DNA of 64,000 nucleotides from positions 62,001-126,000 of the IMG/VR virus record IMGVR_UViG_3300033182_000674; one strand, given 5' to 3'. Below the pieces are notes generated by a model, which saw only the letters and a list, made by a program, of their open reading frames with translations, ran no database searches and had not been told where the DNA came from. Both the position numbers and the translations under genes were made by a program. How positions within the stretch are numbered: the first letter of the stretch is position 1; each line of letters begins with the position of its first letter. This document shows, piece after piece, positions 13,450 through 56,784 of this stretch.

Positions 13450-14979
13450 TTAAAAAGTAATTGTTCCATCATCAGTAAATGTATACCAATAATAGCCACC
13501 ACTTTGAGTTTCTGTAACAGTACCTGTTGTTGCAGATGCTTGTCCATCTGCTCTTAATATGCAAACACCAGATCCACCAGAGCCTGCAAGGGCAGAGTGT
13601 GGTCCACCACCACCGCCGCCACCGGTATTAGCAGTACCATCAGAAGCAGCAGTTGTACCACGAATACCGCCTTGTCCACCGCCGCCTTGTCCACCGGCTG
13701 ATTGCACAGTCGATGAATCATCGCTATTACCGCCGCCACCGCCGGCATAATAGTTACCATCTATCCACTGTAAGCCAGCGCCACCAACACCGCCATAAGT
13801 GCCACCGCCATTACCTCCAGATGCGCCTGCGCCGCCACCGCCGCCAGCACCAGCACCTGCTCCTCCAGCACCAGAGTACGCAGCTCCACCGCCATTGCCG
13901 TATTTCTGCCAGCCTGTACCTGATACATTACCAACGCCAGTACCACCACTGCCACCAGTAGTGCCACCAACACCGCCGCCGCCGCCACAGCCGCCACTAT
14001 TACCTGAAGTACCAGTACCGGTAGTATAATGACCACCGCCACCGCCGCCTTCTGCAGTTAATGATGTAGAATCGGGTAATGTTAATGTTGATGCTGATCC
14101 ATTGAATCCATTAGTATGGCCATTTGCGGGATTGCTTCCAGCTCCGCCGGCGCCAACCACAACTGAGAAAGTTCCACTTAATAAACTTAATGCTTCAGTA
14201 CTAACAAGATAAGCGCCAGCACCACCAGCACCACCGCCGTCTGTACCACCGCCACCACCGCCGCCGACTAATAAATAATCAACAGTAGTATTCCAAGTTA
14301 AATTAAACGTATTTACATCATTTGTTGTATACACACCATCAGAAGCAGTAAATGTTAATTGGAATGTTCCTGCATCATTTTGATCAGTTGATGGTGTGAT
14401 CGTAAATACATTATCTGCTTGAGATACTGTTGCTGTACTTCCAAGAGAACCAGAGGTAACAGCATAAGACCAAGTAATAGGTAAACCTTCTGGATCAGTT
14501 GCACTTAATGTAATAACGGTTGGTGTACCATCTGTTGCTAATTTATATGTTCCTGCTCCGCCTTGTATAATATTAGGTCCAGTATTAGTTGTAGCAATAT
14601 GTTCCCATGCACTACCACTCCAAATGTATAGCTTAGACACGTCTTCTGCATATGCTAAATCACCTGCAGTATTACCAGATGTTGGAAATGAAGAAGTATT
14701 AGCATATGATACAGTTGCGTCTGCGCCAGCAGCACCGTCTAAACCATCAGCTCCATTACCTGCAGTAATCCATTGCCCATCATATCTAATGTACATTCCA
14801 CCAGTTGTAGAATTCCACCAGAATACACCTTCTGCTGCACTACTAGGTGCTGAAGCAGAAATAATAACAGGAGATTGAGATGCATCCCACACACCAGTAG
14901 TTGCATTATAAATGTATGCCGTTTGACCTACTAATGTAGTTTGACCGTCACTTGGATTTGTTGGAAATGTTATTGCCAT
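13450..14979 (-). CDS. Virion adhesin paralog with glycine-rich C-terminal domain
   Basis: Shared N-terminal modules followed by VDYLLVGGGGGGG...YYAGGGGG...ANTGGGGGG...GGSGV. Confidence 0.75.
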   Translation of the reverse strand: MAITFPTNPSDGQTTLVGQTAYIYNATTGVWDASQSPVIISASAPSSAAEGVFWWNSTTGGMYIRYDGQWITAGNGADGLDGAAGADATVSYANTSSFPTSGNTAGDLAYAEDVSKLYIWSGSAWEHIATTNTGPNIIQGGAGTYKLATDGTPTVITLSATDPEGLPITWSYAVTSGSLGSTATVSQADNVFTITPSTDQNDAGTFQLTFTASDGVYTTNDVNTFNLTWNTTVDYLLVGGGGGGGTDGGGAGGAGAYLVSTEALSLLSGTFSVVVGAGGAGSNPANGHTNGFNGSASTLTLPDSTSLTAEGGGGGGHYTTGTGTSGNSGGCGGGGGVGGTTGGSGGTGVGNVSGTGWQKYGNGGGAAYSGAGGAGAGAGGGGGAGASGGNGGGTYGGVGGAGLQWIDGNYYAGGGGGNSDDSSTVQSAGGQGGGGQGGIRGTTAASDGTANTGGGGGGGPHSALAGSGGSGVCILRADGQASATTGTVTETQSGGYYWYTFTDDGTITF

Positions 14980-35666: not shown

Positions 35667-35733
35667 TATAAGGATATTTTATTTTTTAATGGATATGTGA
35701 TTTATGATTAAAATCTTTAATAATGAGAGAAAG

Positions 35734-36030
35734 TAGCAGGGTTTTGGGTGATAAGGAAACCCTGCTAGAACCTCAGATGGATCATGCTGCTAGAGCATAA
35801 CCACCATAAACGTCATCGTTTGCGTTTACTTTAAATGACAGTTAGGCTGTCTAGCCATTCTCAGTAATGCTTTCAAAACCCTGTCGAAACTGATCATCCC
35901 CGCCATAAGCACACCCTGCGTAGTCTTCAAACGTACTCGTCGAACCTTACTGCGCCTGACGGGTGTGCTTATGGTGGAGATGGTGGGAATCGCACCCACG
36001 TCCAGAGCTCCTATTGACATTACGTCAACG
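35734..36030 (-). ncRNA. ssrA: Circularly permuted two-piece tmRNA
   Basis: Acceptor piece with T-arm GTGGG-TGCGATT-CCCAC and CATCTCC-ACCA ending at 35972; 70 nt intervening hairpin; coding piece starting GGGGATG at 35901 (G3.U70 pair); tag frame 35823-35782 = ANDDVYGGYALAA*; terminal hairpin 35734-35767. Confidence 0.93.
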
Positions 36031-36159
36031 AATTAATTGCATCATTTCTGCTGTGACAAAAATAACTTTGCCTAAAAGAAATGTTGCTGCAACCCACAAA
36101 ATCACATAGCACCAACAGCAACTACATGATCCTATGGATTTAAACCATTTATCAAGCAT
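36025..36159 (-). CDS. Small Cys-rich membrane peptide (44 aa)
   Basis: MLDKWFKSIGSCSCCWCYVILWVAATFLLGKVIFVTAEMMQLIR; start overlaps the end of the upstream gene. Confidence 0.45.
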   Translation of the reverse strand: MLDKWFKSIGSCSCCWCYVILWVAATFLLGKVIFVTAEMMQLIR

Positions 36160-51994: not shown

Positions 51995-54544
51995 TTACGA
52001 GAAGAAATCTTCAAGAGTATTTCTTTCGTCAACAGACCAACCAACAGCTTCAAGGATAGGACTTAGAGGTTCAATGAAAGTCTTTTCAAACTGCATATCA
52101 TAGTCAATATACTTATTTAGATTCAATGGCTCTGGAAGGTAATCAGGGAACGAGATAACGTTTTCCTTGATAGGATTAGGTAACTTCATATATGAGAATT
52201 TAACCTTATCACCAGGTTGAATCATTGAATATTTGTTTTCAAGAGATAACTCTTTGATATAGTGATTATATAGCAAAGCACCGCGAACATGAATCGGCGT
52301 GCCTTTACCATAAATTGTAGTGCGGTTTTTCCACTTGTCAATTTCATTTACACCACGAGGGAATGATACATCTTCAGGTGGTAGTTGTTTAAATTCTTGT
52401 TTGAAGTCATTGATAAACTTACGTGTCTTTTCTTCAGAACCAGAGATAATAATCTTAAATGATTCCTTAAACTTATTACGAACAACTTCTGGTGTAGATG
52501 ATTTAATAGCTTCGATACCCATGATCTTGAGTTTAGGTTCAGCATATTGTACACCTTCATTGTTATGTACATTAAGGATATAACGTTTCTTTGCAGTCCA
52601 AATACCACGATCAGCAATAACTTCACGACCCATTTCCATTCGAGCACGGTAACCATTCATTACATCGAATAGTTTAGCATAAGCATCAGCAATAACTTTT
52701 TCAAAATGTTCTTGGCAGATTTTATCAAGTGCAGCAACTGGATCTTTAGGCTGTAACTTTTCTACAAATGGACCGAAGTTAATATAAACAGAATCAGTAT
52801 CAATCGCAATAACATAATCAACGTTATCAGTCTTAAGAATCTTATTCATCTCGATGTTGATAGCTTTTTCAGCCCACTTAATCGATAATTGGCCTGTAAG
52901 AGTTACACTTTCAGCCAAAGCATTGTCGAAGTACTTAAAGTATTTGTTAGCTAATGCACCATAAAGAGAGTTAAGAAGAATCTTAATCGCCATCTGGTTA
53001 TTTTCAAGTTGGTTAATTTCAGATTCTATTTCATGAGATTTTTCTTGTTCATAACGCTGTTTAGCTTCAAGCATTTTCTTCTTGACTACTTTACGTTCTG
53101 AATACAATTCAACGATAAGTTCCGGAATAATACCTTGACGATCTTTATGAAAACCAACACCACTTGCTGTTGCAGCTATATCACCAGTAGTAACTGGTTC
53201 AGACATATTTAAATATTTTTCTGGGCCAACTGGGAAACGTTTATCGATATCACGTACAATAGTTTCGGGTGAGATATTATATTGTACAATAATATTAGGA
53301 TACAGTGAGTTTAAGTCAAATGATACCACCCAATTATGTAGACCAACTTGTGGATCTTTTACATAACCACCAGCAATACTTTTATTTTCACCGCTAGAGC
53401 CTTCAGCACCAACAACTGCGTATGGAATCTTAGGAATCTGACCAATTGGAGATATAATACGTTTCTTCATCAAACGACGATAGATAATTGATTCCCATAT
53501 AGAAGTAGTACCAAAAGTATCATTAATGTTAACGCCACCTTTAAATGCAATCGTAAGAGCTAGGTTAATAAGACCCATCTTATCGTCCATACGTTTAACA
53601 AGCAAAGTATCTTTAATATTATAGTCAATAAACTTTTGGTGATTATGTTTATATAGAGTATGAAGACTACCATACTCAGAATATGATAATTTACTTTCGC
53701 CAAGTACCACGTGAGCAATATGATCTAACTTGTAAGATTCTTGAGCACCATAAGAGTAACCAAACTTCTTAAACAATTCAAGATAGTCTGCTTGTTGAAT
53801 GCCAGTTAGTTCATAACCATATTGAGTTCGTCCACCAATAACAGTATTACGTTCGTTAATAAGTTTCCAAGGAGACAAATGTTTAACTGCTTCTTCACCG
53901 CCAATTGCACGTATACGATTTACAAGATAAGGTACGTCAAAGAAACGAATATTCCAACCTGTTATAACATCAGGTGTATTTGCAATCCAATATTGTAAGA
54001 AAGAAGATAAAAGTTTTGCTTCGTTTTCACAACGATGATAAGCAATACCAACACCATGAGTATCAATCTCTGTTGCTTCAGGATTATATTCGTCCAATCC
54101 CCATACTTGATAGTAATCAGACTTACTAGATTTTAATGCAATAGAGATGACGGGATATGCTGCTTCCTCAGGCTTGGGGAAACCTTCATCGGAAGCAACC
54201 TCGATATCGAAAGTTACAACATTAACGTCATCCATGTTGAACTTGATGTCATTAGGGAATCTTTCAGTAATATACTGATGGATATAGTTGGTCGTACCAT
54301 AGATTTTGAAGTTGTCCATATCACCATACGATGTCATAAACTCTTTAGCTTCTTTCATCGTATCAAAATGAATTGAATCAACTGGAACGCCATCGAATGA
54401 TGTCCATTTAGTCTGACCTTTTGCTGGTACAAAAAAGGTAGGTGAGAATTTTTCTTTCTTTTCGACTTTTATGCCGTTTTCGTCATAGCCGCGATAAAGA
54501 ATGCTATTGCCATAACGATTAACTGATGTGTAAAAACCTGACAC
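51995..54544 (-). CDS. 43: Family B DNA polymerase gp43
   Basis: ExoI FDIEV, DLNSLYP, KILLNSLYGA, DTDS, KKRY; GTG start; promoter TTTACT-17-TATAAT at 54576-54604. Confidence 0.97.
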   Translation of the reverse strand: MSGFYTSVNRYGNSILYRGYDENGIKVEKKEKFSPTFFVPAKGQTKWTSFDGVPVDSIHFDTMKEAKEFMTSYGDMDNFKIYGTTNYIHQYITERFPNDIKFNMDDVNVVTFDIEVASDEGFPKPEEAAYPVISIALKSSKSDYYQVWGLDEYNPEATEIDTHGVGIAYHRCENEAKLLSSFLQYWIANTPDVITGWNIRFFDVPYLVNRIRAIGGEEAVKHLSPWKLINERNTVIGGRTQYGYELTGIQQADYLELFKKFGYSYGAQESYKLDHIAHVVLGESKLSYSEYGSLHTLYKHNHQKFIDYNIKDTLLVKRMDDKMGLINLALTIAFKGGVNINDTFGTTSIWESIIYRRLMKKRIISPIGQIPKIPYAVVGAEGSSGENKSIAGGYVKDPQVGLHNWVVSFDLNSLYPNIIVQYNISPETIVRDIDKRFPVGPEKYLNMSEPVTTGDIAATASGVGFHKDRQGIIPELIVELYSERKVVKKKMLEAKQRYEQEKSHEIESEINQLENNQMAIKILLNSLYGALANKYFKYFDNALAESVTLTGQLSIKWAEKAINIEMNKILKTDNVDYVIAIDTDSVYINFGPFVEKLQPKDPVAALDKICQEHFEKVIADAYAKLFDVMNGYRARMEMGREVIADRGIWTAKKRYILNVHNNEGVQYAEPKLKIMGIEAIKSSTPEVVRNKFKESFKIIISGSEEKTRKFINDFKQEFKQLPPEDVSFPRGVNEIDKWKNRTTIYGKGTPIHVRGALLYNHYIKELSLENKYSMIQPGDKVKFSYMKLPNPIKENVISFPDYLPEPLNLNKYIDYDMQFEKTFIEPLSPILEAVGWSVDERNTLEDFFS

Positions 54545-54608
54545 TGAGACCTCATGATATATGTGATAATACTATATTATACCACACTTCAAAGATAAAG
54601 TAAATAGG

Positions 54609-54703
54609 TGGTAGCGACGGAGTGACTCAGTACCTTATTTAACTACCCTGATGTCTTCCGTGAGACGGGCACTGTCCCTATCTAGCCACAAACGTCGCTA
54701 CCA
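54609..54703 (-). ncRNA. Candidate structured small RNA (long hairpin with central bubble)
   Basis: Perfect 11 bp terminal stem TGGTAGCGACG/CGTCGCTACCA plus inner stems; GC-rich in an AT-rich intergenic gap; AATAAATA late-like promoter just upstream. Confidence 0.6.
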
Positions 54704-54721
54704 ATAGTTATTTATTAAAAT

Positions 54722-55210
54722 TTAGATCACAAAATCCTTTTCATCAACATTTTCAGCCAAATATTCTGGCTCATATGTTTTAGAATTGTATTCGATCTCA
54801 ACTTTACGTGGTTGCTTTTCATCTGGTAAAATTCTTTCTAAATGAATAGATAGAATACCATCATTAAGTTCAGCACCCATTACCTCTACATATTCTGATA
54901 GAGTAAATGCACGCTTAAACTTTCTCTGAGAGATGCCTTTATATTCATATTCTGAATCTTCACGTTTGGTATCACCAAGATCACCAGCAATAACTAGTTC
55001 ACGATCGTTCACATCAATATCAATGCTGTCACGGTTATAACCGGCAACAGCCAACTCAATAATGTATCGGTTGTCTCCAACTCGAACGATGTTGTGAGGG
55101 GGAAAGGAAGGTTCTTGTCTTGAAGAGAGTTTCTCCAAATCGTGAAATAAACGATCAAAGCCAACAAAAGAATTAGGGAAAGCACGTCCCATAGAAAAAG
55201 TATTAGTCAT
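54722..55210 (-). CDS. hsp20: Small heat shock protein (IbpA-like Hsp20)
   Basis: GFDRLF, FPPHNI, IELAVAG, GIS.R.F.R.F.L, A.L.DGIL.I.L....P......I.I. Confidence 0.93.
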   Translation of the reverse strand: MTNTFSMGRAFPNSFVGFDRLFHDLEKLSSRQEPSFPPHNIVRVGDNRYIIELAVAGYNRDSIDIDVNDRELVIAGDLGDTKREDSEYEYKGISQRKFKRAFTLSEYVEVMGAELNDGILSIHLERILPDEKQPRKVEIEYNSKTYEPEYLAENVDEKDFVI

Positions 55211-55299
55211 AATGACCTCCTATTAAGCAAGGTTAAGTTGTGCCCCTATTGCGGGGCGGTTATAGGACCCGACTATTCGGCATCCTAAAATTATTTATA
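55211..55299 (-). promoter_or_regulatory. Late promoter plus ROSE-like RNA thermometer 5' UTR of hsp20
   Basis: TATAAATA then three hairpins; the last pairs CCUUGCU with the SD AGGAGG. Confidence 0.7.
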
Positions 55300-55795: not shown

Positions 55796-56173
55796 TTAAC
55801 CTTTACCACCTTTATATAATTTCTTTTTGATAGTAGTAAGTTGATCTTTAGTTAACAATGAAAGAACTTGACTTGCTTTCTCGTTGGAATATCCATAGTA
55901 CTCTTTAATAGCATCAATATCTGCTGAAGTCTCTGGTTTATTCCACTTAGAAAATCTCTTACGTTTACGAATAAGGAGACGAAGAAAATCATACTGCATT
56001 CTATTATCTAGATGATGCTGTATATTCATTTCATTCGCCATAAGTACAGTATCTTGAAAGTAAGATAATCCTCTATTTACCATAAAAGGATTATAAGCTT
56101 TCTCTGCAAGATCATCAACCATGATGTCCTTTTTAGTATCATTAATAGAATTTAAATACTCAAAAGGATTCAT
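55796..56173 (-). CDS. 62: Clamp loader small subunit gp62
   Basis: Y.PFM.NR.LS...D....ANEMN, RKR.SKW, YYGYS..KA. Confidence 0.9.
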   Translation of the reverse strand: MNPFEYLNSINDTKKDIMVDDLAEKAYNPFMVNRGLSYFQDTVLMANEMNIQHHLDNRMQYDFLRLLIRKRKRFSKWNKPETSADIDAIKEYYGYSNEKASQVLSLLTKDQLTTIKKKLYKGGKG

Positions 56174-56784
56174 GAGTTCAATGCCTGTATAATAGTTTGC
56201 ATACGCATAACATCCATAGCAATATCATGACGCGGATCATGACCAACAAATGATTCTTCAAGACCAGGTGGAATAAATTTATTATCTGCGCCTGTGCCCC
56301 AAAGTAAACCATCAAGTAATGAACGAGTATCACGTACTGTCCACCAAGGATATGGATCTTCTTTGCCAATCTGCTTCATAATGTATTCAAAGAAGATTGG
56401 ATCAAATGTGTTACCACGAGTATAGACTTTTTTAATCTGTTCAACGTCAGCATTTTCTACAAAGAAAGAATATAACTCAGTAATAGACTTATCTGTAGAC
56501 ATTGGCTTTAGAGATTGTTCTTGAGCTTCTTTAGGTTGGCTTTGCCACCATTCTAAAGTAGGCTTATCAATCTTACGGTCAAACTTCTTAACTTGTTCAG
56601 CAACATCAAACTTAATCATCTTAGCAGAGTTAACTAACTCTTGATAAGAATAAGGTGATGAAGTAAAACGACTTTCACTATAGTTAACCATAGCAAAAGA
56701 AAGTACCACACCATTGATTTGATTTTGAGATAAAGTTTCGAAATCGTATATTACACATTCGTTAATCATATTAGTTCCATTCAA
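56170..56784 (-). CDS. dexA: DexA-like DEDDh 3'-5' exonuclease
   Basis: DFETL, T..WW..Q, RG..FD, RD.RS, HD..HD...D. Confidence 0.8.
   Translation of the reverse strand: MNGTNMINECVIYDFETLSQNQINGVVLSFAMVNYSESRFTSSPYSYQELVNSAKMIKFDVAEQVKKFDRKIDKPTLEWWQSQPKEAQEQSLKPMSTDKSITELYSFFVENADVEQIKKVYTRGNTFDPIFFEYIMKQIGKEDPYPWWTVRDTRSLLDGLLWGTGADNKFIPPGLEESFVGHDPRHDIAMDVMRMQTIIQALNS

What the first reader, a model, noticed from the sequence alone, without database searches (positions are those of the whole stretch)
54609..54716. Orphan ~95 nt structured RNA between hsp20 and gp43 (mini-6S-like or protein sponge)
The minus-strand sequence folds as an 11 bp perfect stem, a second stem (GUGGCU-AG/CU-G-AGUCAC), a purine-rich two-sided bubble, and an apical GCCC/GGGU + GUCU/AGAC hairpin with ACGGA in the loop. 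It starts a few nt after AATAAATA (one mismatch from the late promoter), has no U-tract, and lies upstream of gp43's own promoter, so it is neither a simple terminator nor the gp43 leader. A hairpin with a central bubble recalls 6S RNA, which could sequester sigma70-RNAP late in infection. Its ANGGA motifs alternatively recall CsrA/Rsm sponges.
Basis: partly seen in the sequence, partly recalled or inferred. Interest (0 to 1): 0.7.

Follow-up and report, generated by a model that had tools for sequence, protein, structure and literature searches.

The report
Long conserved hairpin upstream of gp43
A 95-nt rod-shaped RNA hairpin between the heat-shock gene hsp20 and the DNA polymerase gene of an uncultured marine T4-like phage is real and kept by compensatory mutations. 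It sits where related phages carry a small terminator hairpin fused to the polymerase promoter, so it is most likely an oversized terminator/3'-end hairpin rather than a 6S-like or CsrA-sponge RNA.

Summary
The structure is in the sequence as described: minus strand 54703-54609, 95 nt, -35.2 kcal/mol, z = -2.9. Two diverged relatives keep it between hsp20 and gp43. L128 has 17 substitutions and no broken pair (P about 0.006). L140 has a basal stem of quite different sequence that still pairs. Every lineage folds better on the sense strand, so it acts as RNA.

No Rfam family matches. There is no second copy in the 219.7-kb phage genome.

The stem ends 2-3 nt before a U-rich tail that contains the -35 of a sigma70-type gp43 promoter (TTTACT-17-TGgTATAAT). 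About 80 more distant relatives have an ordinary short terminator hairpin at this position. This stem-loop-plus-early-promoter layout is the "PeSL" cassette described for T4-type phages.

- The loop ACGGA is lost.
- The late-promoter-like octamer is absent in L140, and AATAAATA shows no strand bias in this genome.
- 95 nt is too short for a 6S mimic.

Best reading (about 0.5): an enlarged PeSL-type terminator and 3'-end-protecting hairpin for hsp20 transcripts that insulates the gp43 promoter. A processed, protein-binding small RNA is not excluded.

The parts
54722..55210 (-). hsp20 (IbpA-like small heat-shock protein) gene; the element starts 19 nt after its stop codon
   Evidence: Pfam HSP20, E = 2e-15. 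ORF list.
54709..54716 (-). AATAAATA, one mismatch from the T4-type late promoter TATAAATA; probably not functional here
   Evidence: Sequence. Perfect TATAAATA in L128, absent in L140. AATAAATA shows no strand bias in the genome.
54609..54703 (-). The 95-nt structured element as a whole (rod: P1, small internal loop, P2, 12 x 16 nt internal loop, P3, 4-nt bulge, P4, 6-nt loop)
   Evidence: Folds. Covariance-model hits in L128 and L140. Pair counts.
54693..54703 (-). P1 5' arm (UGGUAGCGACG)
   Evidence: Pairs with 54609-54619. Of 11 pairs, 5 change on both sides and 2 on one side across three lineages, none broken.
54609..54619 (-). P1 3' arm (CGUCGCUACCA); ends 2 nt before the U-rich tail
54684..54689 (-). 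P2 5' arm (GUGGCU)
   Evidence: Pairs with 54622-54627. G-C to A-U and G.U to A-U to U-A changes in relatives.
54622..54627 (-). P2 3' arm (AGUCAC)
54628..54683 (-). Interior: internal-loop strands (54672-54683 and 54628-54643), apical P3 (54667-54671 with 54644-54648), P4 (54663-54666 with 54653-54656), loop CACGGA (54657-54662), bulge AUCA (54649-54652)
   Evidence: Centroid fold. P3/P4 are pair-compatible in all three lineages, but conservation is not statistically separable from neutral drift (P = 0.52). The loop sequence is not conserved.
54591..54608 (-). U-rich tail CCUAUUUACUUUAUCUUU directly after P1
   Evidence: Sequence. The same 15-mer CCACCTATTTACTTT follows a simple terminator-like hairpin in L074-L078 and relatives.
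54576..54604 (-). sigma70-type early promoter of gp43: -35 TTTACT, 17-nt spacer, TGg, -10 TATAAT
   Evidence: Consensus scan, 10 of 12 plus TG. The same promoter type recurs 12 times on this strand of the window and upstream of gp43 in relatives.
51995..54544 (-). gp43 family-B DNA polymerase, GTG start, GAGG Shine-Dalgarno at 54550-54553
   Evidence: Pfam DNA_pol_B and exonuclease domain. Sequence.

Best explanation
The element is the stem-loop half of a PeSL-type 'stem-loop plus early promoter' cassette at the hsp20/gp43 junction, enlarged from the usual 15-25 nt hairpin to a 95-nt rod. It is transcribed as the 3' untranslated end of hsp20 mRNA, on transcripts that start at the late promoter at 55299 or further upstream.

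Proposed mechanism: the GC-rich basal helix (11 + 6 bp) closes just before the tail CCUAUUUACUUUAUCUUU. This stops or attenuates RNA polymerase. Whether or not termination is efficient, it leaves a 3' end that exonucleases cannot easily pass. That would keep upstream transcription from running over the gp43 early promoter, whose -35 lies inside the tail, and would stabilise hsp20 mRNA.

Shown: the structure, its conservation at RNA level on the sense strand, its position relative to the promoter, and the simple terminators at the same position in relatives.

Inferred: termination or attenuation, 3'-end protection, and promoter insulation.
For: 1. Position. In about 80 IMG/VR relatives (gp43 59-72% identical) the region just upstream of gp43 is a short GC hairpin plus T-run fused to or overlapping a TTTACA/TGTACA-N17-TAtAAT promoter. 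The L074-L078 group has a 10-bp hairpin followed by the same 15-mer tail as the window, and the terminator scan accepts it.
2. The window's stem ends 2 nt before that tail, and L140's ends 3 nt before it.
3. Selection acts on the basal helices. Window against L128: 7 substitutions in or beside 17 pairs, none broken, P = 0.005. In L140 the helix has a different sequence but still forms about 15 bp.
4. The sense strand is more stable in every lineage: -35.2 against -30.8, -33.0 against -25.5, and -33.4 against -18.5 kcal/mol.
5. A 151-nt metatranscriptome contig joins the hsp20 3' coding end to the element, 54771-54622.
6. hsp20 genes of other relatives are also followed by a stable hairpin.
7. 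PeSL cassettes (sigma70-like promoter plus stem-loop, including a subclass with the stem-loop upstream of the -35) were shown to terminate and promote transcription in RB49/phi1, and PeSL-like sequences were noted at the g43 locus (PMC2839356).
Against: - A 95-nt rod is far larger than termination needs.
- The first two tail residues are C, so by E. coli rules this is a poor intrinsic terminator. The simple scan does not call it, because its loop limit is 3-8 nt.
- Interior pairs (P3, P4, and a possible C30-G76 to U-A change) also stay compatible, and total length is conserved: the spacers are 177, 175 and 177 nt. This hints that more than the basal stem matters.
- Most other early promoters in this genome have no hairpin upstream, so this is not a general feature of this phage.
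- No transcript-end data exist.
Confidence: 0.5

Rival explanations
1. RNase III-type processing and stabiliser site. The coaxial P1+P2 helix with small internal defects is cut by a host double-strand RNase. This separates hsp20 and gp43 messages on read-through transcripts and leaves a protective 3' hairpin, as at phage T7 intergenic R sites.
For: Intergenic position. About 17-19 bp near-continuous basal helix with a small internal loop or bulge in all three lineages. Rod shape is maintained along its length.
Against: No cleavage data. T4-type phages are not known to rely on RNase III intergenic sites (my own knowledge). The position tight against a promoter and on a U-rich tail fits termination better.
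Confidence: 0.15
2. A stable small RNA, either cut out of the hsp20 3' UTR or made from the TATAAATA-like motif. Its internal loop and bulges would bind a protein (for example RegA, gp43 or RNA polymerase) or pair with a target.
For: - The whole rod, not only the base, stays pair-compatible across lineages.
- A 21-nt block (GGGUAGUUAAAUAAGGUACU region) is unchanged between the window and L128, and internal-loop sizes are kept at 12x16 and 11x15.
- L128 has a perfect TATAAATA placed so that transcription would start at the first stem residue.
- regA lies two genes upstream.
Against: - The invariant run is not significant (P = 0.16), and interior pairing is not distinguishable from drift (P = 0.52).
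- The promoter motif is absent in L140 and AATAAATA is not enriched.
- Loop and bubble sequences differ in L140.
- There is no paralogue and no wider family.
- The one RNA contig is continuous with hsp20.
Confidence: 0.15
3. Mini-6S RNA that sequesters sigma70 RNA polymerase, or a CsrA/Rsm sponge.
For: Hairpin with a two-sided internal loop. Several GG-containing purine motifs in the window copy.
Against: - No 6S, CsrB or Rsm hit at E<=10.
- It is about half the length of any known 6S, and the apical arm of 9-10 bp cannot mimic upstream promoter DNA (my own knowledge of 6S).
- The loop ANGGA is lost in L128 and L140.
- Bubble sequences are not conserved.
Confidence: 0.04
4. A DNA-level element: the inverted repeat serves as a recombination or shuffling hotspot (PeSL-mediated cassette exchange that brought hsp20 in), or as a protein-binding or replication signal, with RNA folding incidental.
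For: PeSL stem-loops are proposed recombination sites. hsp20 is a cassette present only in some relatives, and the gene upstream of gp43 varies widely.
Against: G.U pairs make the sense strand markedly more stable than the antisense strand in all three lineages. The complementary strand has 3-5 mismatched pairs. That is not expected for a duplex or cruciform signal.
Confidence: 0.08

Closest known systems
PeSL (promoter-early stem-loop) regulatory cassettes of T4-type phages (Arbiol et al. 2010, PMC2839356)
   Same: Intergenic position. A strong sigma70-like early promoter joined to a stable stem-loop lying upstream of the -35 (one of five described subclasses). A Shine-Dalgarno sequence and start codon of the next gene at the 3' end. 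Association with a variable cassette gene and with the g43 locus.
   Different: PeSL stem-loops are short (often GGGG...CCCC) and repeated about 50 times per genome with shared sequence. Here the stem-loop is a 95-nt branched or bulged rod, unique in the genome, and most other early promoters of this phage lack a hairpin.
Intrinsic (rho-independent) terminators, including the C(UUCG)G intercistronic hairpins of T4
   Same: GC-rich helix followed by a U-rich stretch at a gene end. Relatives carry textbook versions, some with a UUCG loop, at the same position.
   Different: An 73-nt 'loop' inside P1 rather than 3-8 nt. The tail starts with CC and is interrupted. The stem is closed by arms 73 nt apart.
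Phage T7 RNase III processing sites
   Same: Intergenic hairpins with an internal loop that separate messages and leave a protective 3' hairpin.
   Different: No sequence or experimental link. The internal loop here is much larger. Not tested.
6S RNA (Rfam RF00013)
   Same: Rod with a central two-sided loop.
   Different: Half the size, no Rfam match, bubble not conserved, and a 9-10 bp apical arm.

Membership tests
PeSL cassette | Lies between the stop codon of one gene and the start codon of the next, ending with a Shine-Dalgarno sequence and start codon | tested here: met
   hsp20 stop at 54722, gp43 GTG at 54544, GAGG at 54550-54553.
PeSL cassette | sigma70-like early promoter (-35 and -10) | tested here: met
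   TTTACT-17-TATAAT with TG, 10 of 12. The same type is found 12 times in the window. Activity not tested.
PeSL cassette | Stable stem-loop adjacent to or overlapping the promoter | tested here: met
   P1 ends 4 nt before the -35. -35.2 kcal/mol.
PeSL cassette | Short conserved stem-loop repeated many times in the genome | tested here: not met
   Single copy. 95 nt long. Other early promoters lack hairpins.
PeSL cassette | Stem-loop terminates or attenuates transcription | not testable with these tools
   Needs a reporter or in vitro assay.
Intrinsic terminator | GC-rich hairpin with a short loop | tested here: not met
   The basal stem is GC-rich, but its arms are 73 nt apart. Not called by the scan.
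Intrinsic terminator | U-tract directly after the stem | tested here: inconclusive
   CC, then UAUUUACUUUAUCUUU. With a 2-nt offset, 5 of 8 residues are U. The same tail passes behind the simple hairpin of L074.
6S RNA | Match to the RF00013 covariance model; about 180 nt with long closing and terminal arms | tested here: not met
   No hit at E<=10. 95 nt.
6S RNA | Binds sigma70 holoenzyme and templates product RNA | not testable with these tools
   Biochemical assay needed.
CsrB/RsmZ-type sponge | Multiple conserved GGA motifs in hairpin loops | tested here: not met
   There is only one loop GGA, and it is lost in L128 (AUAGA) and L140 (GCAAU). No Rfam hit.
T4-type late-promoter transcript | TATAAATA positioned about 6 nt before the start, conserved among relatives | tested here: inconclusive
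   AATAAATA in the window, TATAAATA in L128, none in L140. TATAAATA is strand-biased 39:5 and AATAAATA is not, at 7:10.

The most novel reading that the evidence does not exclude
The rod is released from hsp20 transcripts (or made from its own late promoter in some lineages) as a stable ~95-nt RNA. Its conserved helix, large internal loop and second helix would then be a binding platform for a phage protein, such as the translational repressor RegA or the polymerase, or for host RNA polymerase. That would make it a new phage regulatory or decoy RNA class.
Probability: 0.13. Interest if true: 0.65.

Novelty: new variant of a known kind. Interest (0 to 1): 0.35.

Why it matters
If the main reading holds, the stem-loop-plus-promoter cassettes that organise T4-type phage genomes also exist in uncultured marine relatives. 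Their stem-loop can evolve into a large, selectively maintained RNA rod, which is useful for annotating transcription units in metagenomic phage genomes. If the minority reading holds, it would add a small regulatory RNA to a phage group in which almost none are known.

Tried and rejected
- Rfam at gathering thresholds on the whole window, and at E<=10 on 54400-54900: nothing relevant.
- ARAGORN: no tRNA-like gene at the site.
- BLASTN of the locus against GenBank phages: no match.
- BLASTN and nhmmer of the element against 80 relatives: only the promoter and tail match.
- Own-genome search by DNA and by covariance model: no paralogue.
- IMG/VR scan for the invariant 19-mer: none.
- JGI metagenome scan with the gp43 N-terminus: one distant relative without the element.
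- Protein search with the gp43 N-terminal piece: no further close lineages.
- Model R1 (three-hairpin interior) did not find L140. Model R2 (rod) found it only weakly, at 18 bits and E = 0.14.
- Small ORF in the element: none of 20 aa or more inside it.
- Hammerhead core and K-turn, checked by eye: the motifs are absent or not conserved in L128.
- Cloverleaf or tRNA remnant: rejected, because there is no T-loop or anticodon arm and the 'acceptor' would be 17 bp.
- One randomisation run used a mis-typed structure string ('all B') and is disregarded.
- The first whole-genome folding scan timed out. The rerun shows windows as stable as this element rank about 12th-16th of about 8,800 on this strand; the top windows are the tmRNA and some coding regions.

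Full report
**Context.** The window is part of a 219,676-bp IMG/VR virus record rated complete. It is a marine T4-like myophage. On the minus strand the order is clamp-loader gp62, translational repressor RegA, Hsp20, a 177-nt spacer, then family-B DNA polymerase gp43. No named phage in GenBank has gp43 more than 54% identical.

**The observation.**
- an 11-bp perfect basal stem (P1);
- a 3x2 internal loop;
- a 6-bp stem (P2);
- a large two-sided internal loop of 12 and 16 nt;
- an apical 5-bp plus 4-bp hairpin with a 4-nt bulge and the loop CACGGA.

The energy is -35.2 kcal/mol against -25.3 +/- 3.4 for shuffles, z = -2.9. The MFE draws the interior as three small hairpins and the centroid draws it as a rod, so the interior fold is ambiguous from one sequence. 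In a fold scan of the whole genome, 110-nt windows average -18.8 +/- 5.2 kcal/mol. The element is therefore among the more stable spots but not unique.

**Known RNA families and copies.** Rfam gives nothing at gathering thresholds or at E<=10 around the site. ARAGORN finds no tRNA there. There is no second copy in the genome by BLAST or by covariance model.

**Relatives.**
- *Near-identical strains.* Four estuary and marine metagenome runs hold strains about 97-98% identical. In the element they differ at four sites. Three are unpaired, and one turns an A-U pair of P1 into G-U.
- *L128-L131.* These Logan contigs (hsp20 86%, gp43 92% identical) keep the synteny and a 175-nt spacer. The element has 17 substitutions in 95 nt, about the neutral rate, since four-fold sites differ by 11-32%. 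None of the 30 pairs predicted from the window alone is broken. Two pairs change on both sides and four change through G.U.
- *Significance of the L128 comparison.* Redistributing the same substitution types at random breaks 3.4 pairs on average and gives zero broken pairs in 0.6% of trials. The signal comes from P1+P2 (P = 0.005). The interior alone has no statistical power (P = 0.52), and the 21-nt invariant run is not significant (P = 0.16).
- *L140.* This 75-kb ENA contig (gp43 86%, hsp20 63% identical) again has hsp20, a 177-nt spacer and gp43. An 85-nt rod sits at the same place. Its basal helix has a quite different sequence but forms about 15 bp. It folds at -33.4 kcal/mol with z = -5.0. 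The rod model R2 finds it at 18 bits, E = 0.14.
- *Three-way alignment.* In a structure-guided alignment that I built by hand, which therefore leans towards the structure, 77 of 77 cells pair. Nine pairs change on both sides and seven on one side. RNAalifold returns the same rod.
- *Strand.* All three lineages fold better on the sense strand: -35.2 against -30.8, -33.0 against -25.5, and -33.4 against -18.5 kcal/mol. The constraint therefore acts on RNA read in the gene direction.
- *No further lineages.* None was found in IMG/VR, JGI metagenomes or the protein collection.

**What stands at this position in other relatives.** In 80 IMG/VR loci with gp43 59-72% identical, the sequence just upstream of gp43 is nearly always a short GC hairpin with a T-run. 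It is fused to or overlaps a TTTACA/TGTACA-N17-TAtAAT promoter, and several hairpins have C(UUCG)G loops.

One group (L074-L078 and others) has a 10-bp hairpin followed by exactly the 15-mer that follows P1 in the window, CCACCTATTTACTTT. This 15-mer contains the -35. The scan accepts that hairpin plus tail as terminator-like.

In the window the promoter is TTTACT-17-TGgTATAAT at 54604-54576. P1 ends 2 nt before the tail, and in L140 it ends 3 nt before. hsp20 genes of more distant relatives are also followed by a stable hairpin.

This arrangement is the PeSL cassette of T4-type phages: a sigma70-like early promoter joined to a stem-loop. The stem-loop was shown to terminate transcription. There are five positional subclasses, one with the stem-loop upstream of the -35, and PeSL-like sequences were noted at the g43 locus (PMC2839356).

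- *Late promoter.* TATAAATA is a real signal in this genome: 39 copies on the coding strand against 5, and in the window 12 against 0, mostly 30-80 nt before ORFs. AATAAATA shows no such bias (7 against 10). L128 has a perfect TATAAATA at the site, but L140 has none.
- *GGA motif.* The loop ACGGA is AUGGA in the near-identical strains, AUAGA in L128 and GCAAU in L140.
- *6S.* The bubble sizes are similar (12x16 and 11x15), but the sequences are only loosely alike. The RNA is half the size of any 6S that I know of.
- *Transcript continuity.* One 151-nt metatranscriptome contig runs from inside hsp20 (54771) into the element (54622). At least some RNA therefore carries the element as the hsp20 3' end. 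This rests on the library not being contaminated with DNA. Coverage is too thin to map ends.

**Interpretation.** The best-supported reading is an enlarged PeSL-type stem-loop. It would act as a terminator or attenuator and 3'-end-protecting hairpin for hsp20 transcripts, and would shield the gp43 early promoter from upstream transcription. I put this at about 0.5.

What keeps it from being higher: the rod is much larger than termination needs, the tail begins with CC, interior pairs and total length look maintained, and other early promoters in this phage have no hairpin.

The rivals are:
- an RNase III-type processing site (0.15);
- a released protein-binding small RNA (0.15);
- a DNA-level recombination signal (0.08), disfavoured by the strand asymmetry;

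**Novelty.** The element matches no described RNA family. By place and parts it is a variant of a described cassette type, so I class it as a new variant of a known kind. It is moderately interesting. The open question is why this lineage keeps a 95-nt rod where its relatives manage with 20 nt.

Noticed in passing
window 35691-36085 (-): A two-piece (permuted) tmRNA gene of the alphaproteobacterial type, with tag peptide ANDDVYGGYALAA (Rfam tmRNA_permuted 116.6 bits; ARAGORN). Permuted tmRNAs are already reported in Melnitz-like phages and pelagimyophages (PMC9004378).
   Followed up: partly
window 55205-55289 (-), the hsp20 5' leader: The regA-hsp20 spacer holds TATAAATA (55299-55292), then a hairpin GGAUGCCGAAUAGUCGGGUCC, then a UUGCU...AGGAGG hairpin that masks the Shine-Dalgarno sequence. 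It gives a sub-threshold hit to the ROSE_3 RNA thermometer (23 bits, gathering score 43, E = 0.005). The hairpins are conserved in L128 and L140, although L140 swaps the late promoter for a sigma70-type one. This is a candidate phage-borne RNA thermometer for hsp20.
   Followed up: partly
L001-L080, about 60 nt upstream of gp43: In many marine T4-like relatives the -35 hexamer (TGTACA/TTTACA) of the gp43 promoter lies inside the loop or arm of a terminator hairpin, and the terminator's T-run forms the promoter spacer. This is a very compact terminator-promoter overlap.
   Followed up: partly
window, whole; genome G000: TATAAATA is strongly biased to the coding strand (12:0 in the window, 39:5 in the genome) and mostly lies 30-80 nt before ORFs, including regA (55783) and hsp20 (55299). 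This fits T4-type late promoters.
   Followed up: partly
window 13517-13976 (-): Three adjacent 110-nt windows fold at -42 to -46 kcal/mol, among the most stable in the genome. They lie inside a 509-aa ORF (13450-14979). I did not examine whether this reflects GC-rich coding sequence or an embedded RNA.
   Followed up: no
window 55212: All four metagenomic strains, and one RNA contig, carry one extra T just upstream of the hsp20 start codon relative to the window. This is a strain difference or an assembly slip in a T-run.
   Followed up: no
window 56170-56784 (-) / L128 439-1038: An Rv2179c-like (3'-5' exoribonuclease-type) ORF sits between gp44 and gp62 in this lineage, according to the precomputed Pfam annotation of the relatives.
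   Followed up: no
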